From Dendrobates tinctorius (lineage: Eukaryota), in the NCBI RefSeq assembly GCF_039654945.1, contig NW_027361700.1, positions 27,280,001-27,344,000 of the forward strand: DNA of 64,000 nucleotides, read 5' to 3'. This document shows positions 14,701 to 63,370 of the stretch, piece by piece (within the stretch, counting starts at the first letter, position 1; each line of letters opens with the position of its first letter). A program made the position numbers and the translations under genes. The notes under the pieces are model-generated. The model ran no database searches and was not told where the DNA came from. It saw only the letters and a program-made list of their open reading frames with translations.

Positions 14701-16396
14701 TTCCATATGGGGAAACCTCCTTGAAATTACTATTAAAAATTGCACTTATCTATGGTCTTTTAGAGGGATAGTCTTTTCAGACTGAAAAACCAGGTCAGAA
14801 TCAGGAGAGGTCAACTGAAAGAGGTCATATTTTAGAGAGCTTCCATCTGACAGTAACTGAGGCATTTCCCAGGATATTTTTATCATTTCAAGTTATAGGG
14901 TCAAAATTTTTGCCTCGCTCCAGTGACATAAACAATATGACATGCTGTATAGAGTTCAACTTCTTACCTCTTGGTGGTTCTTTTTCAGATACATCATTTC
15001 TTCAGTAAGGCTTTCAAGTTGTATTTCCAGGTCAGATCTTGTTAAGACCAGTTCATCCAAGACTCTCCGTAGGCCATTAATATCAGCCTCCACACTCTGT
15101 CGAAGAGCTAGTTCATTCTCATATCTGTTGAAGATAACATTTTCATCATTGTGTTGTCAGCTTTGTGAGTTCAAGTGCACCACTTGTCCATTTATACATA
15201 TGTAACCCATATTATACGTATATTACTCACTTAAGTCTGAAGTCATCAGCTGCCAGCCGAGCATTGTCAATTTGCAAAAGAATCTTAGCGTTATCAATAG
15301 TGGCAGCCAGGATCTAAAATACAAGGTGTAAACAATGACTTACTCACCCAAAACCAGAACATGAATGGTTGATGATTCTTTTGCTTCTTTTCGAAAAGAG
15401 GTATGGTATGACAAAACTCTTGCCATCCTTCAAATTGAAAAATAATTAACTGCTACTCCTAAGTGGTCATGACTGAAAGTATCCAGAGAGACAAACTCTC
15501 TGGTACATTTATCAGTGGTTACGATGTTCAAAGTATACTATTTAGTCAAAGACCTTTGTCAACATTATCTCTACAATTCTCATATTTAGTTAAAGTAGCT
15601 GAAACTCCTTTTAGGTTATTCATTGCTTCATACAGTTAAAGGAGGCCTGTTAGATAATTCATGCTGCCCAAACCAGAGCAGACTGTAAACCAGGATACAC
15701 TTAATTTGATTATCTCTAATCCATATTGTGTACAAGTATATGTCTTACCTTATTTCTGAGATCCTCAATAATTGGATCATATTTGCTGTAGTCTGCTGCT
15801 CCATCACCAGTAGTGGAGCCTGGACGTTGTTTTTCATACCATTCTCGGATTTTTTGCTCAAGATCAGCATTAGCCCCCTCTAAAGCTTTGACCTTATCCA
15901 AGTAGGAAGCTAAGCGATCGTTTAGGTTTTGCATGGTTTGTTTTTCATTGCTTGCAAAAATCCCTGAACTGCCTCCACCACCAAATCCTCCACCAGCACC
16001 TCCACCAAATCCTGCACCAGCGCCACCACCAAATCTTCCACCAGCACCTCCACCAAATGCAGCTGCACCTCCAGCTCCTCCACCAAATCCTCCTCCAAAG
16101 CTACCACCAGCACCTCCAGCTAATCCTCCTCCATAACCACCACCAGCACCTCCACCAAATCCTCCCCCGTAACCACCTCCAGCACCACCGCCAAATCCAT
16201 CACCAAATTCATTACCACCAAATTCATTATAGCCAAAATCTCCAAAACCTGCTCCATTCATTATAATTCCTCCTTGCCCACCACCACCAAATCCTCCACC
16301 TCCAATGCCTCCTCCAACTTGCTGAAAGCTTTGTGTTGACCTCCGAAATGAAGCAGAGTTTGAACCACCCAGAGACCTTGCATATTGGGTTGACAT
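8616..16396 (-). CDS. Type I (acidic) keratin gene A, 8 exons, 517 aa; resembles the amphibian KRT12-like / Xenopus 51-kDa adult epidermal keratin group
   Basis: join(complement) 15749-16396, 15231-15313, 14968-15124, 12408-12569, 10401-10526, 10021-10238, 9881-9942, 8616-8713 = 1554 nt, in frame, all introns GT-AG. Gly-rich head; [29 protein letters not shown] and [22 protein letters not shown] motifs; tail [17 protein letters not shown]. Subfamily assignment is from recalled similarity only. Confidence 0.96.
9384..9730. mobile_element. Truncated hAT-type MITE (TAGAGATGAGCG terminus) in keratin A intron 7
   Basis: Terminus similar to the hAT MITEs at 36902 and 48746; other end not found. 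Confidence 0.5.
9881..9942 (-). CDS. Keratin A exon 7
   Basis: 62 nt, [20 protein letters not shown], phase-compatible, AG/GTAAG. Confidence 0.88.
10021..10238 (-). CDS. Keratin A exon 6
   Basis: 218 nt, coil 2B end with helix termination motif, AG/GTAAG. Confidence 0.96.
10401..10526 (-). CDS. Keratin A exon 5
   Basis: 126 nt, SKELKKEIS...[18 protein letters not shown]. Confidence 0.96.
11351..11727. mobile_element. T2/Kolobok-type palindromic MITE
   Basis: TTAA TSD at both ends, AGG...CCT termini, near-complete self-complementarity. Confidence 0.85.
12408..12569 (-). CDS. Keratin A exon 4
   Basis: 162 nt, [30 protein letters not shown]. Confidence 0.96.
13551..13963. mobile_element. T2/Kolobok-type MITE
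   Basis: TTAA|AAGGGAATCTGTC ... GACAGATTTCT|TTAA; related to 41982-42428. Confidence 0.75.
14968..15124 (-). CDS. Keratin A exon 3
   Basis: 157 nt, [32 protein letters not shown]. Confidence 0.96.
15231..15313 (-). CDS. Keratin A exon 2
   Basis: 83 nt, [34 protein letters not shown]. Confidence 0.96.
15749..16396 (-). CDS. Keratin A exon 1 (head, coil 1A, L1)
   Basis: ATG at 16396; 648 nt; donor GTAAG at 15748. Confidence 0.95.
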
Positions 16397-20083: not shown

Positions 20084-20490
20084 AGGGTACCGTTACACCT
20101 AGCGACTCACCAGCGATCCCGACCAGCGATATGACGCGGTCAGGATCGCTGGTGAATCGCTAGGTGGTCGCTAGTGAGCTGCCACACAGGCAGATCTCAC
20201 CAGCGACATCGCAGGGGACGGGGATTGCTACTTACCTGTCACACTAGGCGATCCTGCGTCCTCCCGCCCGGCTCCACGCCTCGCTCATCGTCACAGCAGG
20301 AAGCGCCGCAGGAAGTGACCGACGAGGAATGGTCCAGGAGCTTCTCGCGTGACCAGCGATAACCAGCGGGGGAGCCGGTCGGAGGTAAGTATCACATGCA
20401 GCGATATCGCTAGAAATATCGCTGCAACGTCACAAAATCGGTGACTTTACAGCGATATTGCTAGCGATATCGCAGTGTGTAACGGGGGCT
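20084..20490. mobile_element. PIF/Harbinger MITE inserted in CR1
   Basis: TAA/TTA flanks, GGGTACCGTTACAC / GTGTAACGGGGGC termini; homologous to 4320-4712. Confidence 0.75.
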
Positions 20491-36901: not shown

Positions 36902-37188
36902 TAGTGATGCGCTAACGTGCTCGGATAAGGTGTTATGGGAGCATGCTCGGGTGCTATACGAGAATCTTAGGCGTGCTCGAAAAAAATGTTCGAGACCCCA
37001 AGGCTGCATGTCTCGGAGCTGTTCAACAGCCACAACACATGCAGGGATTACCTAACAGGTAATTCCTGCATGTGTTGTGGCTGGCGAACAGCTGTTTGAC
37101 ATGCAGCTGTGGGGCCTCGAACATATTTTTCGAGCACACCCAAGAATGCTTGGATAACATCTTATCTGAGCACGTTCACTCATCACTA
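36902..37188. mobile_element. hAT MITE (palindromic)
   Basis: TAGTGATG...CATCACTA termini; perfect 8-bp TSD GTAGCAGG. Confidence 0.9.
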
Positions 37189-38059: not shown

Positions 38060-41000
38060 CTATAAGTGTAAAGAACAAAGAAAAGGTGTTAGAAATCCTA
38101 CTAGTACTACTAATAATAATATCACTATCACTAATAATACAATCAATGCACAACTAATGGTACCATCACTACACCTACTACCACCACTATTACTACCACC
38201 CCTACATCTAGTGTATGACAACTACAACTACTGTGACTAAATCTACATCTAAATGGATACCGCTAAAAGAACCATCCCTACAAGTGCTACTAATGCAACA
38301 ATTACCAGTGTTACCACTACATCTACTACCATGCTAGCACTAAAACTACTATCAATAGTATTAGTACCACCATTACAACTACTACGGCTGCTACAATCAT
38401 CACTATATCTTGTGTACTACCATGAGTCCTACTACCAATGGCAGGACTAGTAACATAGCATGTACGTAACAAGATCTATGACTTTACAATTAAGATTTGA
38501 GACTTCAGTGATCACAACCAGTAAAACAGGATGCAGAATTTTTCAACTCCACTGTCATATCGATAGTACATATCTCAAATACATTGGGCATTGTATAGTT
38601 ACTGAAACTGTTGTTATGATGTTCAGTTTGAAAATACTATAACATTATGAAAGGTACCCAGTAGTACTATGCTATCACGTGTTACATGGTAAGACATCAA
38701 TACAAGCTAATGAGACTATCCATTACTAGACAACCGCAGCCTAATCAATTCAGGACTCTAGCTAAAATAAAAACAATCTATGCTCACCTCCCACAGTGGC
38801 AAGTGAAATAACAGTGTTGTGTGACATGAAAACTGCAGCCAAAGAGTAATATAGAAGAAAACAAAAAAAAAGCTATTCAGCTCCCCATTAGATGAATTCC
38901 TGTGGCTTTGAGTGTGGACTCCAGTAAGGTGCTCGGAAAAAGTGGCTGTGGTAATCAAACAAAAAAGTTCCAGCAACAAACATCCAAATCAGATTGTTGA
39001 ATAGACGTTAAAACTTTATCTTTATTGCAATGCCTTTAAAAACATACTGTTAAAATTGTAAATCCAGGGGATTACGCGTTTCGAACAAAAATGTTGGCTA
39101 TGACTAAGAACATTTTTGTTCGAAACGCATAATCCCCTGGATTTACAAATTTAACAGTATGTTTTTAAAGGCATTGCAATAAAGATTAAGTTTTAATGTC
39201 TATTCAACAATCTGATTTGGATGTTTGTTGCTGGAACTTTTTTGTTTGCAGCCAAAGAGTGTATGCTCATGAAATGAGGCCTTGACTATTTCGTCAAAAT
39301 GGATGTCCGCCCTTGTGGAACATTAATGAACTGCAGCCAAACAGGGTCCACTCATTAGCTGCAGCTTGCATGTAGCACAACAATACGGTGTCACTCTTCT
39401 GAAATGGCATCACTGTGGAAGGTGAGTTAAGGGTTGTCCAGTAATAGACATCACCTTTAAGAGCATTATAATTGCCATAATTACCATCTGAGCTTTGACT
39501 TCCAGATCCAGCAGTGGCTGATGAACTTTGACCACCAGATCTTGCACCTGCAGTGCTAGAAGAGGCTGATGCACTAGAGCTTTGGCCAGCAGAACCTGCA
39601 CTTCCAGAGCCTGAGGAGCTAACTTGACCTCTAGATGCAGAAGATGATGTTGTGCTAGAGGTCTGACTAGAAGTACGTGAGCCACCAGAACCTCTACTTG
39701 AAGTATCTGAAGCACTAGAGCCTCCACTTCCAGAAACTGCACTTCCTGGTCTTGTAGTTTGGGAAGTTGAAGTTGCAGACCTGGAGCTTTGAGTTGCAGA
39801 AGCTCTGGAAGACTGAGCTGATGTGCCTCCAGCTCCGGAACCTTGAGTAGTAGTTGTAGTTCCGCTTCCTTGTGTTGTACCTTGTCCAGTCTCCGCATCT
39901 CTGTTTGAAAAACAAAATATAAAGAAAATGGACAACTACCAATGCATTATGTTAGAAAAGTGGTGCAGTCATTTTCTTATTTACCCTTCTTCCAAAAGCT
40001 TTTGATAGGTTGCAATTTCCTGTTCAAGATGAACTTTAATATCCAAGAGTTCTTCATATTCAGACTTTTGGCATTGTGTTTCATTCTTTATTTGTTCGAG
40101 CTGCTCCTCCACACTGCTGATTGCCATCTGGATTTGGGCTATTTGTGAGCAGTAGCTTCCTTCTTTTTCTGCCAGTGAACTCTCCAAAGATTGTTTCTAG
40201 TTTAAAATATGAGAAAGTTTATTAACTTCTTCACACATTCCAATTTCACAATTTATCTAGTTAGGCTCATTTATGTGTTCATAGGGGCAGGGTTGTGTGG
40301 AGGAAGTCAGTATGTTGGCACATGTGCAGAGGGGTAACGCAATTCTGAGAGCCAATGCAAATTTTGCAAGAGGGTCTCCCACCCACCATAGGGCATTTGT
40401 AATGCTGTTTTTTTATTTGACAAGAGGACCTTGTATGTATGCCCTCATAAACTTCTATCAGAGATATTACAGTTATGTTCAACTCAGCAATTACAGTGTA
40501 TAAAGCCATAATAATGATTAAATATAACCTCCTCCTCCGTATATCTCTGAAATAATCTCATGATATCTTCCGACACGCAACCTCCAGTCCTTCCAAGACC
40601 TCCTTCTCTCCTCCACACTCATGCATTCAACCAGTCGCCTCCAAGACATCTCCCAAGTATCCCCCATCCTCTGGAATTTCGTGCCATAACACATCTGATT
40701 ATCTGCCACACTAGAACCTTTCAGATGGAAACTGAATATCCATCTCTTCAAGAAAGCTTGCAGCTTTCAATGACCCCCCTGCCATTTCACCACCACGGAA
40801 GCTGCTGCAGCCTCCAACCTACTAGCTCCTTCCCCATATTCCTGTAGAATGTAAGCCCGAAAGGGCAGGGTCCTCTCCCCTCTAGATCAGTCTGTGATTG
40901 TTAGTTTGTTCACTGTAATCTATATCTGTATTTTGTATGTAAACCCTCCTCATGTACAGCACCATGGGATCAATGGTGCTCTAAAAATAAATAATAATAA

Positions 41001-47000: not shown

Positions 47001-47769
47001 CCTCATGTTTTATATATGCCACAGATCAAGATGTAATGTGAAAAAACAAATAACCTTCACATTTTTTAAAAAGCTTAAATGAAAAAAAATCTGAAATACT
47101 AGCACTGATTTGACTTCATGCCGAGTTATTTTATAGTACAGATTATTTTTTTCTCACCTGAGTTTTCAGATCTTCAATTGTTTGAAAATATTGGCTGTAG
47201 TCTTTGGATCCTGTACTAGTGGATCCTTGCTGATTCTTATCATACCAGTCCTTGATTTTTGCCTCAAGGTCTGTATTTGCCTCTTCCAAAGCATGAACTT
47301 TGTCCAAATAAGAGGCCAGGCGGTCGTTTAGGTTTTGCATTGTTTGCTTTTCATTTCCAGAGAGTAAGCCATCATTTCCACCAAACCCACCACCGGTGAC
47401 ACCTCCCCCAAAGCTTCCACCAGCAGAGCCTCCTCCAAAGCCACCAGATCCAAAACCTGCCCCAGAGCCACCAGAGCCAAAACCTCCACCAAAACCACCA
47501 GATCCAAAGCCTCCTCCAGAGCCAACACCGAAACCACTTCCTGAGCCGCCACCAAAACTACCTCCTGAGACGGCACCACCAAATTGTCCTCCTGGTCCTC
47601 CATTATATCCATCGGTAAAACATGCAGCTCCCTGGCCACTACCAAAGCCTAAACCACCACCGCGTTGCTGTCTATAAGATGAACTGCTGACACTGACATT
47701 ATAACTAGAAGCAGAAGTAGAACCGTAACCCCTGCTAACCCCTCCACTACTTCTATATTGATTTGCCAT
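37965..47769 (-). CDS. Type I keratin gene B, 8 exons, 620 aa, with an extended Ser/Gly/Thr/Ala tail
   Basis: join(complement) 47158-47769, 46460-46542, 42720-42876, 41649-41810, 41441-41566, 39985-40196, 39485-39900, 37965-38059 = 1863 nt, in frame, GT-AG introns; LNDRLASYL and [22 protein letters not shown] motifs. Confidence 0.95.
38095..38450. repeat. Degenerate (ACT/ACC)n low-complexity tract in keratin B intron 7
   Basis: Trinucleotide-periodic composition. Confidence 0.7.
38848..39246 (+). mobile_element. Penelope-like non-autonomous insertion with inverted arms and hammerhead-like core
   Basis: 14-bp TSD TGCAGCCAAAGAGT (38834-38847, 39247-39260); palindrome 38956-39248; TGACTAA-stem-GAAACGC motif at about 39096-39135. 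Confidence 0.75.
39485..39900 (-). CDS. Keratin B exon 7 (expanded low-complexity tail)
   Basis: 416 nt, open, phase 2 in and phase 1 out like exon 7 of the paralogues; AG at 39901-39902, GTAAT donor. Confidence 0.87.
39985..40196 (-). CDS. Keratin B exon 6
   Basis: 212 nt, ends TYQKLLEEG, donor GTAAA. Confidence 0.94.
40530..41003 (+). mobile_element. Old L2 LINE 3' fragment
   Basis: Similar to 18053-18686 (RLQDIS..PILWN); ends AAATAAATAATAATAAT. Confidence 0.75.
41441..41566 (-). CDS. Keratin B exon 5
   Basis: 126 nt, [11 protein letters not shown]...LQSQSAM. Confidence 0.94.
41649..41810 (-). CDS. Keratin B exon 4
   Basis: 162 nt, [21 protein letters not shown]. Confidence 0.95.
41982..42428. 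mobile_element. T2/Kolobok-type MITE
   Basis: TTAA|AGGGAATCTCTCAGCAG ... CTGCTGACAGATTCCCT. Confidence 0.75.
42720..42876 (-). CDS. Keratin B exon 3
   Basis: 157 nt, [14 protein letters not shown]...YLKKNHEE. Confidence 0.95.
42903..43106 (+). mobile_element. V-SINE (tail continues at about 45119)
   Basis: A box TGGCTCAGTGG, B box GAGTTCAAATCC, V core; homologous to 35752-35993. Confidence 0.85.
43729..44960 (+). mobile_element. Non-autonomous Helitron with minisatellite
   Basis: A|TCTAATATATAAAGCT start; hairpin GCCGGGCAGCGCCGGGC then CTAG|T; removing it restores the host inverted arm exactly with no TSD. Confidence 0.92.
44158..44893. repeat. 41/43-bp G-rich minisatellite, about 17 copies
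   Basis: GACTATGGGATGGAGGATRTGT(AT)GATGGGTATATGGGCA units. Confidence 0.95.
45403..46285 (-). mobile_element. Possible further Helitron-derived composite with GT-rich minisatellite (45945-46130)
   Basis: A|CTAGATGG at 45403 resembles a Helitron 3' end on the minus strand; 5' TC end not clear. Confidence 0.35.
46460..46542 (-). CDS. Keratin B exon 2
   Basis: 83 nt, [27 protein letters not shown]. Confidence 0.95.
47158..47769 (-). CDS. Keratin B exon 1
   Basis: 612 nt from ATG (MANQYRSS) to donor GTGAG. Confidence 0.95.
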
Positions 47770-50687: not shown

Positions 50688-50748
50688 TTAATACTATTGT
50701 TTTCTGTACATAGAATATCATTGTTCTCGGCAGCACATATCCTGCTTA

Positions 50749-51185
50749 GGCTAGCTTCACACTAGCGTATGACCGAGCTGTGGAGGGCTGAGAACGTCCT
50801 CCGTGAAGCTCAGCCCACGGCCACACCTCCTCCGGTCAGCTCCACCTACGTCGGCATGCGGCCTGCGTACGCTATCTTTAACATTAGGTACGCAGGCCAT
50901 GCCGATGTATGCGGATGCCTCTGCATGCATCATTTTGAAGGTGCAGCGACCGCAACAAAATGCAACTCGTTGCGTTCGAGCGGTTTTCCGCACAGTCAAA
51001 ATGATGCATGCAGAGGCATCCGCATACATCGGCATGGCCTGCGTACCTAATGTTAAAGATAGGGTACGCAGGCCGCATGCCAATGTAGGTGGAGCTGACC
51101 GCAGGAGGTGAGGCTGTGGGCGGAGCTTCACGGAGGAAGTCCACATCTCTCAGCAGCTCGGCCATACACTAGTTTGAAACTAGCC
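50749..51185. mobile_element. PIF/Harbinger MITE, near-perfect 437-bp palindrome
   Basis: TTA TSD; GGCTAGCTTCACACTAG / CTAGTTTGAAACTAGCC termini. Confidence 0.9.
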
Positions 51186-51311
51186 TTACACGAGCATATT
51201 GGTGCATTTGTTGGATAATTGGCGGCCTAAAAAAAGAGAGAAGAGCCAGCACTGCCAGTGGTCAGAACGCATAACATGAGGTGCATATGCACATATCTTA
51301 CTGCATTCAAA

Positions 51312-51384
51312 ATGAGACATTTAGCAAAATATTGATCAATATATTGAGCCACCCCGCCACGTCAAGGCAATCTCATATGGGGGG
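51312..51384 (-). ncRNA. Putative HDV/CPEB3-like ribozyme (inverted copy)
   Basis: Reverse complement of the same motif. Confidence 0.6.
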
Positions 51385-52056
51385 TCCTACTCTACATTTT
51401 TATTTATTCAATGTGCCATTGTGGCCTCCTAAATGTTTTAAAAGCAAGACCATATCAAATGCAATCCATACCTGAAGCATATCTGCATCACTCCCGTGCA
51501 GCCAGATGGAGCAGGTGCAGATAAAAGCCAACCAGGTCTGAACACAGACATCTCAGGTTTGACCTCCACACACTGCCCAACCAGCAAACACAGATGAAGG
51601 GCAATGCAGGCTCAGACATGGATGCAAAAATAAATAAAGCCTGGGGCAGGGCGGGCTCTTCTCTCTTTCTATTGCAAATTGGTTTTGTGGCTGACCACCA
51701 CTGTTGCCGTGCACGCTGGGTCATGTTCGCCATCTTTTCTGTGTTTATTGTGATTGATCTAGGCTGCTGTGCACACTCACGGCAGCCCCACCCTGCCCCA
51801 GGCTTTATTTATTTTTGCATCCATGAATGAGCCTGCATTGCCCTTCATCTGTGTTTGCTGGTCAGGCAGTGTGTGGAGGTCAAACCTGAGATGTCTGTGT
51901 TCAGACCTGGTTGGCCTTCATCTGCACCTGCTCCATCTGGCTGCACGGGAGTGATGCAGATATGCTTCAGGTATGGATTGCATTTGATATGGTCTTGCTT
52001 TTAAAACATTTAGGAGGCCGCAATGGCACAGTGAATAATAAAAATGTAGAGTAGGA

Positions 52057-52129
52057 CCCCCCATATGAGATTGCCTTGGCGTGGCGGGGTGGCTCAATAT
52101 ATTGATCAATATTTTGCTAAATGTCTCAT
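52057..52129 (+). ncRNA. Putative HDV/CPEB3-like ribozyme (monomer 1; L3 UUGGCGU)
   Basis: Same fold, 540 bp upstream. Confidence 0.6.
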
Positions 52130-52596
52130 TTTGAATGCAGTAAGATATGTGCATATGCACCTCATGTTATGCGTTCTGACCACTGGCAGAGCTGGCTCTT
52201 CTCTCTTTCTATTGCAAATTGGTTTTGTGGCTGACCACCACTGTTGCCATGCACGCTGGGTCATGTTCGCCATCTTTTCTGTGTTTATTGTGATTGATCT
52301 AGGCTGCTGTGCACACTCACGGCAGCCCCGCCCTGCCCCAGGCTTCATTTATTTTTGCATCCATGTCTGAGCCTGCATTGCCCTTCATCTGTGTTTGCTG
52401 GTCAGGCAGTGTGTGGAGGTCAAACCTGAGATGTCTGTGTTCAGACCTGGTTGGCCTTCATCTGCACCTGCTCCATCTGGCTGCACGGGAGTGATGCAGA
52501 TATGCTTCAGGTATGGATTGCATTTGATATGGTCTTGCTTTTAAAACATTTAGGAGGCCGCAATGGCACAGTGAATAATAAAAATGTAGAGTAGGA

Positions 52597-52669
52597 CCCC
52601 CCATATGAGATTGCCTTGACGTGGCGGGGTGGCTCAATATATCGATCAATATTTTGCTAAATGTCTCAT
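52597..52669 (+). ncRNA. Putative HDV/CPEB3-like self-cleaving ribozyme (monomer 2)
   Basis: P1 CCCCCC/GGGGUGG, P2 AUGAGAUU/AUGUCUCAU, P3 GCC/GGC, L3 UUGACGU, J1/4 CU, P4 hairpin, J4/2 CUAA; folded by eye. Confidence 0.65.
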
Positions 52670-52890
52670 TTTGAATGCAGTAAGATATGTGCATATGCAC
52701 CTCATGTTATGCGTTCTGACCACTGGCAGTGCTGGCTCTTCTCTCTTTCTATTGCAAATTGGCGGCCTACTGCACATCCTACTGTCTCTGGAAATTCAAA
52801 GATTTACCAGACATTTTAAAAGCTAGGGAGATCAGTCTTTTTGTTATCTTTTCACAGAATCAATATGTACATATTTAAACAGACCCTTAA

Positions 52891-53701
52891 AGGGGTTTTC
52901 TCATGAACAAAGTTAATTTTAGTCAACGTTTTAATCAATAAATCTTTAAATAATAATAATTTCCACAATTGGATGTATTTAAAAATAATGTTCCTGTGCT
53001 GAGAAAATCTTATACATGTGCCCCTGCTATGTGCTGTTTAATGTCTGTGTCTCAGCAAAAAGCAAACAGATGAACGGCAGACTAGGGCACACAAATCACC
53101 ACATTAACAGACGGAGATATTTATCTGAAGTATTGCGGCATATATTTTAGTCAAAAAACGGAGGTGCTTGCATGAAAAAACATGAATACAGGACCCGTAG
53201 AAGCGAGTAATCGCGAAACGGCCGTTGTCCAGCACCTCCCCTAGCATTCCTCTAACGTCCTGCATGTCCACATATCTATTGATGGAATTCATGTGAAATA
53301 AAGACGCACAGTTTTTCAGCTTTATTGGTGAGTGCTGCATATGCCTTCTTTTTTCATTTCACATTGATAATGTCTGTGTCTGACCATGCAGGAACATGGT
53401 CTGATCATACCATTGCTCCTGGGCAGGGTGAGGGGGGCAAAAGAGTATACAGACATAGCAGCATGGGATCGCAACTTGTTTGTTTGAGGTAGAACATTGC
53501 TTAAAAACAGGACAGTGAAATCAGCTGCGATCCCATGCTGTCCTGTCTATACACTCTCTTTTACCTCCTCCCCCGCCCAGGAGCTGTGGTATGATCAGAC
53601 CATGTTCCTGCATGGTCAGACACAGCCATTACACAGTACACTGCAGGGGCACATTTATTATGTTATCTCAGCTCAGGAACATTATTTTAAACACATTCAG
53701 T
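52891..53701. mobile_element. T2/Kolobok-type MITE, interrupted by a Penelope-like insert and truncated by an LTR
   Basis: TTAA|AGGGGTTTTC start; internal inverted symmetry (52965-53050 versus 53620-53703). Confidence 0.65.
53053..53367 (+). mobile_element. Penelope-like pLTR fragment with minimal hammerhead motif
   Basis: 14-bp TSD TAATGTCTGTGTCT (53039-53052, 53368-53381); GGAC-CCGTAGA-AGCGAGTAATCGC-GAAAC-GGCC-GTT-GTCC at 53191-53230; downstream AATAAA and GGTGAGTG. Confidence 0.78.
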
Positions 53702-54834: not shown

Positions 54835-56707
<1,873 letters not shown>

Positions 56708-59052: not shown

Positions 59053-61908
59053 CTAGAAGAAATCTTTCATTTTAAGTTGTGTAAGGATTCGCTGGTATAA
59101 ACAGTCATGGCAACCATATAATCCATTTGACCTTGGCTAACACAATGCCTTTAGGAGATTGTATCTAATTCTTATCTAGTAGTTGTAGGAAGACCTCTGC
59201 GCTTCAGCCACACAGGTGTTCTAGGCCTTATGCTGGATAAGGGCATTTGGATGCTGCCCTCATGCCCAGCGCTTAGTTGATTTATAATGATTTCATTTTT
59301 TTAGGGGATTATAAAGCTCTAACTAGATACAAATCTTGGATACTAGTACTGCAATGCAGCCAATCTAGCCCCCCGAGCTACAGTGAGGACATTTATACAT
59401 ACATAAAACTTTCATGAATCATGACATTTTTTTTCTTTTATTTTTCTATTTTTTGGTTAAGATTTTATTTTAGTGTTGATTAGCAACTTGGTCATTTTAT
59501 TTTGACCAGCAACCTACCTTTTTTGGAGTCTACAGAAGATGTCTGTGACTTTGAAGCCTGTGAGCTCGAAACCCTTGATGCTGATGATGCTGATGCGGAT
59601 GCAGATGATGAGGATGAAGAAGTCCTGCCTCCTGAAGACTTGCTCCCTGAAGACTGGGAGAGTTGACTGTGGGATGAAACATTTATAATTAAGACTTTTT
59701 GTATTCTTGAAGAAACATGAAATTATGCAATCAAATATTCAATGGCAGGTCTTTGAAGATGAGTTAGTGCTGTAGCTGACTAATAAATACTATGTTAGAC
59801 CATTTTTAACCTAGTGTTACTTCTAAATAAACACATATGGCCCGCCATTATGCCTCTTCACAGTTTTTGCATCACTTGTGCGTACCCCAGTTCGCCATCC
59901 AGCAGGCGTCTATATGTTTCAATTTCCATTTCCAATCTGGTCTTGATATCAAGAAGTTCTCTATACTCTTGGCTCTGTCTCTCCATGTCTGCTCTGATCT
60001 GGAGCAACTGGTCCTCAATTCCGCTAATAACAAGCTGGATCTGTTGCAGTTGTACTCCATAGCGGCCTTCAGTCTCAGCCAGGGTGTCTTCAAGGGATTT
60101 TTTCTACAATTGGGACATTGCACCATTACACATTTTACATGAAATAGCGATAAGCCAAAAATTAACAGATTCTTAACCATATTAACTGGTTTTGTTAATG
60201 TCATGTTCAAAATTATATTTTAGATATTATGAAACATCTTGGAGATAAACTTCAAAATTGCGTTGGAAAATGGTCTTCTACTGGAAGATGGCCAACATAT
60301 ATAGAATATTATAGAATTCGTTCCATAAGGGATTGGTTTTCTCAAAAAAGTAGTCTTTTGGAGAAGTTTAATGTTAATAGATGTCATTATATTGTTATTA
60401 GTGTATGTTGTATTTTATACTAAGTATATTGACTTACCATTGCCAACTGTGACTGGAGTTCAATCTCCAGTCCTTGGAGAGTACGTCTGAGATCGGAAAT
60501 TTCTGACTTGCTTGTCTGCACCTGTTCCACACCAGCTGAAATTTCCTTCTTTAGTTCATTGCTCTGGAATAGGTCAACATGTTTTATATTAGTTTGCTAG
60601 AAAGGGCAACTTAACCTTAATGATAAATGTATGAATCATTCTCACCTTTGAGTTGAACCATGCCTCTGCATCTCTGCGGTTCTTATCTGCCAATGCTTCA
60701 TAGTCTGCTCTCATGTCATTCAGAAGCTTAGTGAGATCCACACCTGGTGCAGCATCCATTTCCACGTTCACTGTTCCAGCAGCGCTGCTCTTTGCAATCT
60801 GCATTTCCTGTTCATTAAAATATTAGAAGTTAGATCTGGGTCCTGTTCTGCCCCTATCTATTTTGAGGTCTGCTGACACATAGCGATGGTAACTGCAAGA
60901 GTTAGGATCCATCCTGATTGGGTACATCTTGTCGTGGTGGGATGTCTTTCACGCTTTTTTGATCTTACTATAGGGTATTTAATCATTTTTTATCCTATTA
61001 TATGGTATTTGATCATTTTGTTTATATGCTAGATTTTTTTTAATGTGCTAAATACATGCAATGTATTTCTAGCCTGGTCTTTTAGACAGATATGTAACTA
61101 TGAGGTGTGCCGAGATATCACTCAGACCAAGACCTTGGTACCAGAGGAGCACCAGAAGCCCTTCTGCTATGTTAGAAGACACTAATAAAACAAATGGAAC
61201 CAGGTAAGTAAGAAGTCAGGTTATAGGTTTAAGATTGTGGTTAGTAAGGAAGCTGAAAAAAAATGCTTATGTCTATAGGTTGGAGAGGATCATTTTTCCA
61301 AGATGTCTTCTGTTGAATTTTGGAGATAAATAGGATGAGGACTATAGTTCAACTGGGAGAAGATACATTTGTACAATATTTTTCCATAATATCACAATTG
61401 ATCAAATTATCAGTATGATGCTTGTATTCCAATTTGTCCATTTGCTCATTCCCTATGAAAGGATATATGATCTGAAGTAAGGCCTACCTCTTCATGGTTC
61501 TTCTTCAGGTAGGCCAACTCTTCAGACAGGCTCTCAATCTGGATCTCCAAGTCTCCTCTGGCCAGGGTCAATTCATCCAAGACTCTGCGGAGTCCATTGA
61601 TGTCAGCCTCCACACTCTGGCGGAGAGCCAGCTCGTTCTCATACCTTGCATAAAGTAACAAGACATTCAATATATGCAATAAAAAAGCATGTAGCAAACA
61701 ATGCAATGCCATCCACAAACCTTCCAACCAATATAGATTTCAGTAACCAGACATTTTGATATTAAAAAAGGCGCTCGCTGGAAAAAAATAAAAAAAGCAA
61801 GTTTTCCACAATGGGTTCGCCCCAAAACAGAACCTTTCCAATAATTAAAGTGTATTATTAAATTACTATATGACCACATGATTGTAGATGTGCCAAATAG
61901 GAAGGTTA

Positions 61909-61957
<49 letters not shown>

Positions 61958-63288
61958 GCTAATCTTGAATCCTGTGCTTTGTCCTGACTGCCATTTTACT
62001 AGGGGGCCATGTGTTATAAAGGTAATATGGAGCCACCAGTCTTTTTATGTAGCTACAACTCCACATCTCCATGAAATGAGATCCAACATTGTGTTACCCA
62101 CTGCCTATGCCGTTATGTATTAAGCAATGGCTTGAAGATATTAAAGCCACTGCACTGCTTGACAAGGAGCATTGTTCATCATAAATTATTTATTTGGAGA
62201 AGCCTAAAGACTCTTTAACAACATATATTATCGATACAGGTGTCAGAAATTAGATTAAGTTGATGCTTGATCTTACTTCAGTCTGAAGTCATCAGCAGCC
62301 AGTCTTGCATTGTCGATTTGGAGGACAACACGGGAGTTATCAATGGTGGCAGCCAAGATCTAGGGAAAAAAGACAAAACAAAAGAGCATACATTACAATT
62401 GATCTAGGGTTACTGGTTAACAATGTAAGGAGTATTTATGCAGGTCTGAAATTTTCTGAAATACTGAAAGGTGCACCTAATTGATGAGTCGATGAAACAG
62501 ACTGTTTTTGTATAGACAACATTTACAAAAGAAATATGCCAGCATGGCTGTGATCTCAGTACACGGAAATGTGATGTGAAGTTAATCTTGTGGTTAGTTA
62601 TAGTACAGCAATAACTTAATCTGCTAATGCTTTAGGGCTTATTGTTTCTAACATTAATTAATGGCAGATTGATAGTATAGGCTTATTATTTAAGCACAAA
62701 ATAGGTAATCAGTAATGTTCTGAAATATTTACAATGTTTTGATAGCTAATATCTCAGAAAAACAATTAACAGTACCTTGCTCCTCAAGTCATTGATGGTT
62801 TCATAGTACTTGCTGTAGTCTTTGCCGGGTACACCTACTCCAGAACTAAGTTGTTTCTCATACCAGTCTCGGATCTTCACTTCCAGCTCACCATTGGCAG
62901 CCTCAAGAGCTCTAACTTTATCCAAGTAGGAAGCCAGGCGGTCATTGAGGTTTTGCATGGTCTGCTTCTCACCTGCACCAAAGGATCCAAAGCCACCACC
63001 TGCTCCTCCACCAAAGCCGCCAGCTCCTCCACCAAAGCCACCAGCTCCTCCACCAAAGCCACCACCAAAGCCACCAGCTCCTCCACCAAAGCCACCAGCA
63101 GAGAATCCACCAGCAGAGAACCCACCACCGGATCCTACAGCAGAGCCCAAGGAGAATGCTCCACTGGATCCACCACCATAGCCTCCACCAAAGCCTCCTC
63201 CATAGCTGCTACCACTGAAGCCACCTCCATAGCCCCCAGAACTTGAAACTTGATAGGATGATGCGGAGCTTCCACGATAAGAGGACAT
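58952..63288 (-). CDS. Type I keratin gene C, 8 exons, 502 aa; resembles Xenopus XK81 / 47-kDa (krt12-like) embryonic-larval keratins
   Basis: join(complement) 62776-63288, 62277-62359, 61488-61644, 60646-60807, 60438-60563, 59886-60103, 59518-59666, 58952-59052 = 1509 nt, in frame. Kozak GCCACCATG; N-terminus [10 protein letters not shown]; tail [24 protein letters not shown]. Subfamily assignment is from recalled similarity. Confidence 0.96.
59518..59666 (-). CDS. Keratin C exon 7
   Basis: 149 nt, Ser-rich, ends SVDSKK, AG/GTAGG. Confidence 0.9.
59886..60103 (-). CDS. Keratin C exon 6
   Basis: 218 nt, [23 protein letters not shown]. Confidence 0.96.
60438..60563 (-). CDS. Keratin C exon 5
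   Basis: 126 nt, [11 protein letters not shown]...LQSQLAM. Confidence 0.96.
60646..60807 (-). CDS. Keratin C exon 4
   Basis: 162 nt, [21 protein letters not shown]. Confidence 0.96.
61488..61644 (-). CDS. Keratin C exon 3
   Basis: 157 nt, [14 protein letters not shown]...YLKKNHEE. Confidence 0.96.
61912..61951. repeat. (TA)n microsatellite in keratin C intron 2
   Basis: About 20 TA units. Confidence 0.95.
62277..62359 (-). CDS. Keratin C exon 2
   Basis: 83 nt, [27 protein letters not shown]. Confidence 0.96.
62776..63288 (-). CDS. Keratin C exon 1
   Basis: 513 nt, ATG 63288 in GCCACC context, donor GTACT. Confidence 0.95.
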
Positions 63289-63370
63289 GGTGGCTGAATT
63301 CCTGTTAGAGCAAACCTGGGCAACGTGTATAAAATAAGAAGTGTGGATAAAGACTGTGGTCTTCACACTC

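What the first reader, a model, noticed from the sequence alone, without database searches (positions are those of the whole stretch)
51230..52756. 540-bp tandem monomers plus a 5' inversion inside one TSD: a retrozyme-like element with an HDV-like instead of hammerhead ribozyme
Seen: a single 13-bp TSD brackets an inverted partial copy of about 425 bp, two near-identical 540-bp monomers and the first 21 bp of a third. There is no credible ORF and no hammerhead core. The 3' end is GCTGG plus a pyrimidine tract, like the hammerhead-bearing Penelope-like inserts in this window, and the putative ribozyme lies on the matching strand. Established: retrozymes are non-coding tandem elements whose ribozymes release monomers that circularise, and Penelope-like elements make tandem or inverted pLTRs with variable TSDs. 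Inference: one cleavage per monomer would release a 540-nt RNA with 5'-OH and 2',3'-cyclic phosphate ends, and rolling reverse transcription of its circle by a Penelope-type RT would give this more-than-unit-length insertion.
Basis: partly seen in the sequence, partly recalled or inferred. Interest (0 to 1): 0.85.

Follow-up and report, generated by a model that had tools for sequence, protein, structure and literature searches.

The report
Ribozyme-free tandem Penelope-type retroelement insertion
The 1.5-kb non-coding insert (two 540-bp repeats plus a flipped partial copy between 13-bp target duplications) is really in the sequence and looks like an ordinary Penelope-type retroelement insertion primed from both DNA strands, but the proposed HDV-like ribozyme does not hold up.

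Summary
Observation confirmed. A perfect 13-bp TSD (51217-29 / 52757-69) brackets an inverted 423-bp segment, two 540-bp units that are 98.5% identical, and a 21-27-bp start of a third. There is no ORF over 101 aa and no hammerhead.

The ribozyme reading is not supported. Rfam finds no self-cleaving ribozyme, even at E<=10. The proposed fold (52597-69) lacks G1, has only 5 of 7 P1 pairs, lacks the two C-G P1.1 pairs and has CUAA in place of CRRA. A descriptor loosened until it passes hits 904 places in the window, and 10% of random monomers even after adding its best feature. The 86-nt stretch folds no better than shuffles, and the "second member" near 60.9 kb is not homologous.

What is there: two unrelated inserts in the window (56177-56399 and 38848-39246, TSDs of 13 and 14 bp) share the architecture. 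Both ends face outward with GCTG(G/A) plus a T/C tract. In E1 the inverted piece is the upstream continuation of the same multimeric RNA, with a 13-15-nt overlap at the tail. This is twin priming at a preferred RT start site, as published for Penelope-like elements. No circle or ribozyme is needed.

Unverified first-stage notes list similar tandem-plus-inverted, 13-bp-TSD elements elsewhere in this genome. The autonomous partner and independent read support were not obtained.

The parts
51217..51229 (.). Left copy of the 13-bp target-site duplication, AATTGGCGGCCTA
   Evidence: Exact direct repeat D12. It flanks the repeat block exactly.
51230..51655 (-). Inverted segment. It is the reverse complement of unit positions 132-540 plus the first 13 nt of the tail, with 3 extra A (T in element sense) next to the TSD. 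I read it as cDNA primed from the top-strand nick at an upstream tail motif of the same multimeric RNA.
   Evidence: Inverted repeats I1, I2, I4, I5; blastn 97.7%; coordinate mapping and private substitutions.
51246..51250 (-). GCTGG motif of the outward-facing left-end tail (GCTGG CTCTTCTCTCTTT TTT | TSD)
   Evidence: Motif scan; alignment of the six insert ends.
51654..51655 (.). Inversion junction: a GG microhomology shared by the inverted segment's inner end and the GCTGG that precedes the direct part
   Evidence: Read (I1 ends at 51655; D1 starts at 51645 with two mismatches).
51656..52195 (+). Unit 1 (540 bp), from CTCTTC... to ...GCTGG
52196..52735 (+). Unit 2 (540 bp), with 8 differences from unit 1
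   Evidence: The + strand RNA folds at -184.2 kcal/mol, z = -2.40; the - strand gives z = +0.35.
52736..52762 (+). Terminal extension ('tail'), CTCTTCTCTCTTTCTATTGCA(AATTGG). It is 21 nt, plus 6 nt that are also the first 6 nt of the TSD (microhomology between template and target).
   Evidence: (D2).
52731..52735 (+). GCTGG motif 21-27 nt upstream of the insertion end. The same motif lies at the unit junction, 52191-52195.
52757..52769 (.). Right copy of the TSD
   Evidence: D12.
52597..52669 (+). Rejected as a ribozyme.
   Evidence: The features were compared with the descriptor in PMC6326823.
56164..56412 (.). E2: an unrelated 223-bp insert (56177-56399) between 13-bp TSDs (TGATTTAGTTATT). 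Both ends face outward with GCTGG + T/C tract, and the internal tail is present in both orientations.
   Evidence: No ribozyme.
38834..39260 (.). E3: an unrelated 399-bp insert (38848-39246) between 14-bp TSDs (TGCAGCCAAAGAGT). It has 140-nt head-to-head arms. One end is GCTGGAACTTTTTTGTT; the other extends 108 nt further to GAGCTGAATAGC(T)9GTTTTCTTCTATATT.
   Evidence: No ribozyme.

Best explanation
E1 is a single retrotransposition insertion of a non-coding, non-autonomous element whose RNA is a head-to-tail multimer of a 540-nt unit. An enzyme supplied in trans, most likely the RT/GIY-YIG protein of a Penelope-like element, made nicks staggered by 13 bp. It then started reverse transcription from both 3'-OH ends at its preferred internal start site, the pyrimidine tract just downstream of a GCTGG motif that recurs once per unit. 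The bottom-strand cDNA started at one tail (52756-52762). It ran back 1101 nt and stopped at the GCTGG two units upstream. That is the position where the top-strand cDNA had started (51230-51233) and run a further 409 nt upstream. Joining the two cDNA ends on a GG microhomology gives an inverted upstream piece, an integer number of direct units and a short tail, all inside one TSD. No self-cleaving ribozyme and no circular RNA are required, and none was detected.

Shown: the anatomy, the shared end motif, the absence of recognisable ribozymes, and the strand asymmetry of RNA folding. Inferred: the order of priming, the multimeric linear template, and the identity of the enzyme.
For: Anatomy and single TSD.

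Geometry: the inverted segment is unit positions 132-540 plus tail 1-13. The direct part starts at tail position 1 (or -2). The two are therefore adjacent on an unrolled template with a 13-15-nt overlap, and together represent one contiguous ~1510-nt (2.8-unit) segment. This also explains why the direct part is 2 units + 21-27 nt; the chance of a random 5' end falling in that 27-nt segment is about 5%.

Two unrelated inserts, E2 and E3, have the same plan: TSDs of 13 and 14 bp, both ends outward-facing GCTG(G/A) + T/C tract ending 12-31 nt after the motif, and bodies that are not homologous. In E2 the cDNA from the distal tail again ends exactly at the proximal GCTGG.

Literature: PLE insertions are partial tandems, often with an adjacent inverted 5'-truncated copy and a 30-40-bp tail at one end. 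Non-autonomous PLEs give multicopy head-to-tail insertions (PMC8557442; PMC8969392). Purified Anolis PLE protein nicks and extends both strands, starts RT at two internal RNA sites that define the tail, and is proposed to use multi-copy transcripts (PMC11167929).

Family relatives at 88-99% identity in four public runs of the same organism include contigs that run through the unit junction, for example 52047-52460. Tandem organisation is therefore a family property.

The + strand RNA is more stable than shuffles (z = -2.40) with the tail unpaired. The - strand is not.
Against: No autonomous element with RT + GIY-YIG and this tail was found. The window has none and the rest of the genome could not be searched.

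Canonical vertebrate PLE clades carry a hammerhead in the pLTR, and this unit has none.

The tail is 21-27 nt, not 30-40.

The 3' junction has 6 nt of template/target microhomology, whereas the Anolis enzyme starts without homology in vitro.

A linear multimer and a circle give the same product and cannot be told apart from one copy.

No independent reads were shown to cover the flank junctions or the unit-1-specific variants.
Confidence: 0.6

Rival explanations
1. Each unit carries an HDV-like ribozyme (52057-52129 and 52597-52669). It releases a 540-nt RNA that circularises and is copied by rolling reverse transcription, making this a retrozyme with an HDV-like ribozyme instead of a hammerhead.
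For: The stretch can be drawn in the nested double-pseudoknot topology, with a perfect 6-bp P2 (ATGAGA/TCTCAT), a 3-bp P3 (GCC/GGC), an L3 reading UUGACG that keeps U..CG, a P4 hairpin and a C in J4/2 (read). It lies on the strand that the tail and the RNA folding asymmetry point to. The insert is longer than one unit.
Against: No Rfam HDV, CPEB3 or other ribozyme match at E<=10 in 1.8 kb, nor in the whole window.

Against the descriptor in PMC6326823: position 1 is C, not G. P1 has 5 of 7 pairs, with an internal C.U and a terminal A.G. P1.1 is U.U plus one swapped G-C, instead of two C-G pairs. J4/2 is CUAA, not CRRA.

A canonical descriptor gives 0 hits and the candidate fails it. With the L3 U..NCG added it gives 19 loci, 3 of them the element's own copies, and hits 50 of 500 Markov-shuffled monomers.

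The 86-nt stretch folds at z = +0.13, and the minimum-energy fold uses a competing ACCCCCCAU/GUGGCGGGGU hairpin.

The claimed second member at about 60927-60946 scores 12, against a background of 10.0 +/- 1.7 with a maximum of 17.

Contigs run through the predicted cleavage site.

The insert's ends are 160 nt away from the predicted cleavage site. E2 and E3 use the same insertion route without being tandem.
Confidence: 0.03
2. The enzyme and priming are the same, but the tandem was made at insertion from unit-length RNA. Either the RT jumped from the 5' end of one monomer RNA to the start site of another, or it ran round a circle made by a host ligase or back-splicing, without any ribozyme.
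For: All three copies differ only by private substitutions, as expected if a single sequence was copied repeatedly. Template jumping and rolling-circle models are discussed for PLEs and animal retrozymes (PMC8557442; bioRxiv 10.64898/2026.07.22.740005).
Against: E2 and E3 show the same insertion route without any tandem, so the machinery does not make tandems by itself. Family contigs in other runs also cross the unit junction, so tandem source copies that would give multimeric transcripts exist. No defined monomer end could be identified.
Confidence: 0.17
3. The element is a non-autonomous partner of a LINE (non-LTR retrotransposon). The inversion is classical twin priming, as in L1, and the GCTGG/Y-tract is the LINE's 3' recognition tail.
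For: The breakpoint geometry (inverted upstream part, direct downstream part, small overlap) is that of L1 twin priming (my own knowledge: Ostertag and Kazazian 2001). The 13-14-bp TSDs lie in the LINE range. There are 2-6 nt of microhomology at the 3' junctions.
Against: In all three inserts the second priming also occurred at the specific tail motif rather than at a site fixed by target microhomology. All three inserts are inverted or head-to-head, whereas only a minority of L1 insertions are. There is no poly(A) or microsatellite tail. Both-strand extension from defined internal start sites is reported as PLE-specific.
Confidence: 0.12
4. The structure is not one insertion event. It is either an assembly artefact (a long-read foldback or duplicated collapse) or a later DNA-level duplication/inversion of a single inserted unit.
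For: No laid contig bridges the flanks. No listed run, including three ~2.1-Gb DNA contig sets, holds the unit-1-specific words.
Against: The three copies carry different private substitutions, which an artefactual duplication would not. The TSD is perfect and sits exactly at the outer ends. Two other inserts show the same plan. The negative rests on 6 sampled words, and Logan contigs show presence, not absence.
Confidence: 0.05

Closest known systems
Penelope-like element insertions (Penelope/Poseidon, Neptune; in vitro model PAc from Anolis) and their non-autonomous derivatives (e.g. non-autonomous Chlamys elements such as MRC1)
   Same: Partial or multicopy head-to-tail arrangement. An adjacent inverted 5'-truncated copy gives outward-facing identical ends. 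A short terminal extension at one end. TSDs. RT start at an internal, sequence-defined RNA site used from both nicked strands (PMC8557442, PMC8969392, PMC11167929).
   Different: No ORF and no hammerhead. The tail is 21-27 nt rather than 30-40. The start region is GCTGG + T/C tract rather than the AC-rich stem-loop of PAc. There are 6 nt of target microhomology at one junction. The autonomous partner is not identified.
Animal non-LTR retrozymes (type I hammerhead tandem repeats, newt/axolotl satellite 2 type)
   Same: A non-coding tandem unit of a few hundred nt, dispersed in the genome and probably mobilised by PLEs (PMC7229834; bioRxiv 10.64898/2026.07.22.740005). Unverified first-stage notes report hammerhead arrays with tandem + inverted copies and a 13-bp TSD in this same genome.
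   Different: The defining self-cleaving ribozyme is absent, and no evidence for circular RNA was obtained. The unit (540 nt) is larger than the amphibian average of 316 bp, but within the reported range of 51-972 bp.
HDV-like ribozymes of retrotransposons (R2, RTE, L1Tc and others) and CPEB3
   Same: Only a drawable topology, plus P2, P3 and the L3 U..CG.
   Different: G1, a full P1, the two C-G P1.1 pairs and CRRA are missing. Known examples sit at the 5' end of the element RNA, whereas this one would sit 160 nt from the insert's end. No covariance-model match.
L1 5' inversions by twin priming
   Same: The inverted upstream segment and the direct downstream segment of one RNA meet with a short overlap inside one TSD.
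   Different: The second priming here is at a specific recurring motif, not at an arbitrary microhomology. There is no poly(A).

Membership tests
HDV-like self-cleaving ribozyme | 7-bp P1 starting with G1 paired to Y at the cleavage site | tested here: not met
   52597-52603 CCCCCCA against 52626-52632 GGGGTGG gives 5 of 7 pairs. Position 1 is C (descriptor from PMC6326823).
HDV-like self-cleaving ribozyme | P1.1: two C-G pairs between L3 and the two G after P1 | tested here: not met
   L3 positions 2-3 are UG and the partners are CU. That gives one swapped G-C pair and one U.U.
HDV-like self-cleaving ribozyme | L3 U...CG, 3-bp P3, P2 closing the outer pseudoknot | tested here: met
   UUGACG, GCC/GGC and ATGAGA/TCTCAT. 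With these included, the pattern still occurs in 10% of random monomers and at 16 unrelated window loci.
HDV-like self-cleaving ribozyme | J4/2 catalytic C in CRRA context | tested here: inconclusive
   The sequence is CUAAAUG. A C is present, but the next base is U, not a purine.
HDV-like self-cleaving ribozyme | Match to curated covariance models / canonical descriptor | tested here: not met
   No HDV, CPEB3, drz or any other ribozyme family at E<=10. The canonical descriptor gives 0 hits in the window.
HDV-like self-cleaving ribozyme | Self-cleavage | not testable with these tools
   This needs in vitro transcription. Contigs of RNA-type runs cross the proposed site, but they carry no end information.
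Retrozyme (animal non-LTR type) | Non-coding unit in tandem copies, dispersed, with TSDs | tested here: met
Retrozyme (animal non-LTR type) | A self-cleaving ribozyme (hammerhead) in every unit | tested here: not met
Retrozyme (animal non-LTR type) | Unit-length linear and circular RNA | not testable with these tools
   Only assembled contigs were available. They cross the unit junction, which fits both multimers and circles.
Penelope-like element insertion (non-autonomous) | Head-to-tail (pLTR-type) arrangement with an adjacent inverted 5'-truncated copy | tested here: met
   against PMC8557442.
Penelope-like element insertion (non-autonomous) | Short terminal extension (tail) at one end, reflecting alternative internal RT start sites | tested here: met
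   E1: a 21-27-nt tail at the 3' end and 13-16 nt at the inverted end. E2 and E3: a second start site 70-108 nt downstream, used at one end only. The lengths differ from the published 30-40 bp.
Penelope-like element insertion (non-autonomous) | Sequence shared with the 3' end or pLTR of an autonomous RT + GIY-YIG element | not testable with these tools
   The window has no RT or GIY-YIG ORF. The rest of the genome is not searchable. Two metagenome scans were blank.
Penelope-like element insertion (non-autonomous) | Hammerhead motif in the repeat (canonical EN+ clades) | tested here: not met
   Naiad/Chlamys PLEs also lack canonical hammerheads, so this feature is not universal.

The most novel reading that the evidence does not exclude
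The 540-nt unit RNA is nevertheless released and circularised, either by a self-cleaving motif of a class not in Rfam (or a very aberrant HDV-like fold) or by a host ligase. A Penelope-type RT then copies it by rolling-circle reverse transcription. That would be the first retrozyme-like element without a hammerhead in an animal.
Probability: 0.07. Interest if true: 0.8.

Novelty: new member of a known kind. Interest (0 to 1): 0.3.

Why it matters
As a ribozyme discovery it does not stand. What remains is useful on a smaller scale. Three unrelated non-coding inserts in one 64-kb window give a natural, in vivo record of the behaviour recently shown in vitro for a Penelope-like enzyme: both strands are nicked about 13 bp apart, and both are extended from a sequence-defined internal start site. 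The inserts point to a very short candidate recognition/start signal, GCTGG followed by a T/C tract, that seems enough for trans-mobilisation. If a genome-wide survey confirms it, this would define a class of ribozyme-free Penelope-dependent elements. It would explain how their tandem-plus-inverted structures arise by twin priming on multimeric RNA. It would also warn annotators that such structures are not evidence for circles or ribozymes.

Tried and rejected
1. Rfam on the whole window at gathering score and at E<=1, on the element at E<=10, and on E2 and E3 at E<=10. No ribozyme of any class appeared, only chance or hairpin matches.

2. Hammerhead core regex on both strands. Nothing lies in E1, E2 or E3.

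3. My own HDV-like descriptor at four stringencies with Markov-shuffle controls. The candidate passes only descriptors that are common by chance.

4. Folding of the 86-nt candidate: no excess stability.

5. Homology of the 'second HDV-like member' near 60.9 kb: within background.

6. Tandem Repeats Finder returned nothing because its longest period is 500. This is not evidence against the 540-bp repeat.

7. Search for an RT/GIY-YIG partner in the window. It found only a Tc1/mariner-type transposase remnant and keratin first exons.

8. Two exact-pattern scans of metagenome contigs for other copies: blank.

9. Public runs and contigs laid on the locus. These gave many family relatives but no flank-bridging piece and no end information. 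A search for unit-1-specific words listed no holder, from only 6 sampled words.

10. Organism identification through a keratin exon gave only 'Chordata'.

11. A common cleavage motif at the six nick sites: only 2 of 6 end in ATT, so no claim is made.

12. Pol III A/B boxes and tRNA-like origin: one A-box-like 10/11 match at about 52563, no properly spaced B box and no Rfam tRNA hit. Dropped.

13. DNA transposon reading. The inverted ends are offset by 8-11 nt at the tips, and 13-14-bp TSDs exceed those I know for any DNA transposon superfamily (from memory, not checked here). Rejected.
Full report
1. OBSERVATION

The region was read directly and analysed for repeats. An exact 13-bp direct repeat, AATTGGCGGCCTA, lies at 51217-51229 and 52757-52769, exactly at the outer edges of a repeat block.

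The block consists of:
- an inverted segment, 51230/33-51655 (423 bp aligned);
- two direct units of exactly 540 bp, 51656-52195 and 52196-52735, with 8 differences;
- the first 21 bp of a third unit, 52736-52756, or 27 bp if the AATTGG shared between element and TSD is assigned to the element.

The inverted and direct parts meet on a GG microhomology at 51654-55. Tandem Repeats Finder was silent only because its period limit is 500. The longest ORF is 101 aa and does not look like a protein.

Differences among the three copies are all private: 5 in unit 1, 2 in unit 2 and 6-7 in the inverted piece. This is the pattern expected if one sequence was copied three times in one event and then decayed by about 1%.

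2. THE RIBOZYME CLAIM

A first-stage note (s1-366783) places the proposed HDV-like fold at 52597-52669.

Rfam 15 finds no ribozyme of any class:
- in the whole window at gathering score or at E<=1;
- in 51100-52900 at E<=10.

Covariance models are weak for HDV-like ribozymes, so I also compared the fold with the published descriptor (PMC6326823). That descriptor has a 7-bp P1 with G1-Y, two C-G pairs in P1.1, L3 U..CG, J4/2 CRRA, and P2, P3 and P4.
- The candidate keeps P2 (6 bp), P3 (3 bp), L3 U..CG and a C in J4/2.
- Position 1 is C.
- P1 has only 5 of 7 pairs.
- P1.1 is one swapped G-C pair plus U.U.
- J4/2 reads CUAA.

I coded the topology and searched both strands:
- At the stringency needed to admit the candidate there are 904 loci in 128 kb, about one per 140 nt.
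- Adding the candidate's best feature (L3 U..NCG) leaves 19 loci, three of which are the element's own copies.
- A canonical descriptor gives none, and the candidate fails it.

Of 500 Markov-shuffled monomers, 50 have at least one hit to the tailored descriptor. All 100 tested have a hit to the looser one.

The 86-nt stretch folds no better than its shuffles (z = +0.13) and prefers a competing hairpin. The 'diverged second member' in a keratin intron (s1-366878) shares 15 of 20 nt. Its local score of 12 sits inside the window's background (10.0 +/- 1.7, maximum 17), so there is no homologous second sequence on which covariation could be claimed.

I conclude that the HDV-like ribozyme is a drawing that chance allows, not a supported feature. 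There is also no hammerhead core in the element.

3. WHAT IS THERE

The 3' end is GCTGG followed by a pyrimidine tract. The same motif lies at the unit junction and, reverse-complemented, at the left end of the insert. Both ends of the insert therefore face outward with the same tail.

Scanning the window for this signature next to TSDs, and reading the hits, gave two more inserts:
- E2, 56177-56399, with a 13-bp TSD (TGATTTAGTTATT);
- E3, 38848-39246, with a 14-bp TSD (TGCAGCCAAAGAGT).

Their bodies are unrelated to each other and to E1. All six ends nevertheless terminate 12-31 nt after GCTG(G/A), in a T/C-rich tract.
- In E2 and E3, one end uses a second such motif 70-108 nt further down the template.
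- In E2, the cDNA begun at the distal motif stops exactly at the proximal GCTGG.
- In E3, the two cDNAs meet head to head after 140 nt.

4. MECHANISM

Mapping the E1 pieces onto an unrolled tandem template shows the following.
- The inverted segment (unit 132-540 plus tail 1-13) is the immediate upstream continuation of the direct segment, which starts at tail position 1, or -2 counting the GG.
- The two overlap by 13-15 nt.
- The whole insert thus represents one contiguous ~1510-nt stretch (2.8 units) of a multimeric RNA.
- That stretch was copied from two primers: one at the 3'-most tail from the bottom-strand nick, and one at the tail two units upstream from the top-strand nick. The two cDNA ends were then joined.

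This is twin-priming geometry with the second priming at a specific motif. It explains, without further assumption, why the direct part is an integer number of units plus a short tail.

It matches what is published for Penelope-like elements:
- partial or multicopy tandems, an adjacent inverted 5'-truncated copy and a short tail at one end (PMC8557442; PMC8969392);
- for the purified Anolis enzyme, nicking and extension of both strands, internal RT start at two defined sites that delimit the tail, and a proposed multi-copy transcript as template (PMC11167929);
- animal retrozymes argued to be non-autonomous PLE derivatives (bioRxiv 10.64898/2026.07.22.740005).

The + strand RNA of a unit is more stable than its shuffles (z = -2.40, with the tail unpaired). 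The - strand is not (z = +0.35). This agrees with the strand given by the tail.

5. OTHER COPIES AND EXPRESSION

Ten public runs of the same coded organism hold 18-59% of the element's sampled words. Contigs of four runs laid on 50900-53100 at >=88% identity gave 48-182 pieces per run, mostly 90-95% identical.

The family is therefore multi-copy. Some contigs run through the unit junction (for example 52047-52460, with 5 differences and 1 gap), so other copies or transcripts are tandem too.

No contig bridges a flank junction, there is no end or strand information, and the kind of these runs is only guessed. No claim about expression or RNA ends can be made.

A search with a 104-nt stretch rich in unit-1-specific variants listed no holder, from 6 sampled words. 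Independent read support for this exact structure is missing, and an assembly artefact cannot be formally excluded. The private substitutions, the perfect TSD and the two analogous inserts argue against one.

6. LIMITS

No RT or GIY-YIG coding sequence is in the window. It holds three keratin first exons and a Tc1/mariner-type transposase remnant. The rest of the genome could not be searched, and two metagenome scans were blank.

The assignment to a Penelope-type enzyme therefore rests on architecture and literature, not on an identified partner.

Unverified first-stage notes report a Penelope RT (s1-364489) and hammerhead or other units in tandem-plus-inverted layouts elsewhere in this genome (s1-376864, which also reports a 13-bp TSD, and s1-377045). 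These are leads, not evidence.

Points that fit less well:
- the tail is shorter than the published 30-40 bp;
- the TSD length is nearly constant;
- one junction has 6 nt of microhomology;
- there is no hammerhead.

A linear multimer and a circular template cannot be distinguished from the DNA product.

7. VERDICT

The Penelope-type, non-autonomous retroelement reading is supported by anatomy. The HDV-like ribozyme reading is rejected, and the circular-RNA reading is unnecessary though not excluded.

It is a new member of a known kind (a ribozyme-free, Penelope-type non-autonomous element) and of moderate-to-low interest. Its main value is as a natural record of dual-strand priming at a short GCTGG/Y-tract signal.

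Noticed in passing
window 56164-56412: E2: a 223-bp non-coding insert with a 13-bp TSD (TGATTTAGTTATT). Both ends are outward-facing GCTGG + T/C tract, and the proximal tail is present in both orientations (22-nt perfect inverted repeat 56248-56269 / 56380-56401). It lies immediately beside the Tc1/mariner-type remnant.
   Followed up: partly
window 38834-39260: E3: a 399-bp insert with a 14-bp TSD (TGCAGCCAAAGAGT), 140-nt head-to-head arms (97%) separated by 13 nt, and a 108-nt extension at one end only that finishes in a second GCTGA + T-rich tail. A 13-nt partial third copy of the target sequence (AACTGCAGCCAAA) recurs at about 39329-39341.
   Followed up: partly
window 50748-51186: Large palindromic element (197-nt arms, 90% complementary, 45-nt loop) immediately left of E1, with inner short palindromes GGCCTGCGTAC...GTACGCAGGCC. 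It looks like a MITE or foldback. Contigs related to 50974-51195 are abundant in all four runs laid.
   Followed up: no
window 52898-53045: The stretch just right of E1 matches very abundant contigs in all four runs (summed word depth 118-928), with many loose ends. It is probably another high-copy repeat.
   Followed up: no
window 55056-55790 (-): A 244-aa ORF with HTH_Tnp_Tc3_2 and DDE_3 domains (E 6e-13 and 5e-11): a Tc1/mariner-type transposase remnant.
   Followed up: no
window 15716-16396, 47143-47769, 62746-63366 (all -): Three ORFs with a glycine-rich head and the start of an intermediate-filament rod (Pfam Filament, E 1e-18 to 1e-20). These are first exons of three tandem keratin genes, and E1 lies between the second and third.
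   Followed up: no
window 60927-60946: The 'second HDV-like member' noted by the first stage shares only CTTGnCGTGGnGGGnTGnCT (15/20) with E1. Its score is within the window's background, and it sits in AT-rich, internally repetitive intron sequence.
   Followed up: yes
window 37012-37100 and 20399-20475: Long near-perfect hairpins give sub-threshold matches to several unrelated miRNA precursor models on both strands. They are likely small palindromic repeats (MITE-like), not miRNA genes.
   Followed up: no
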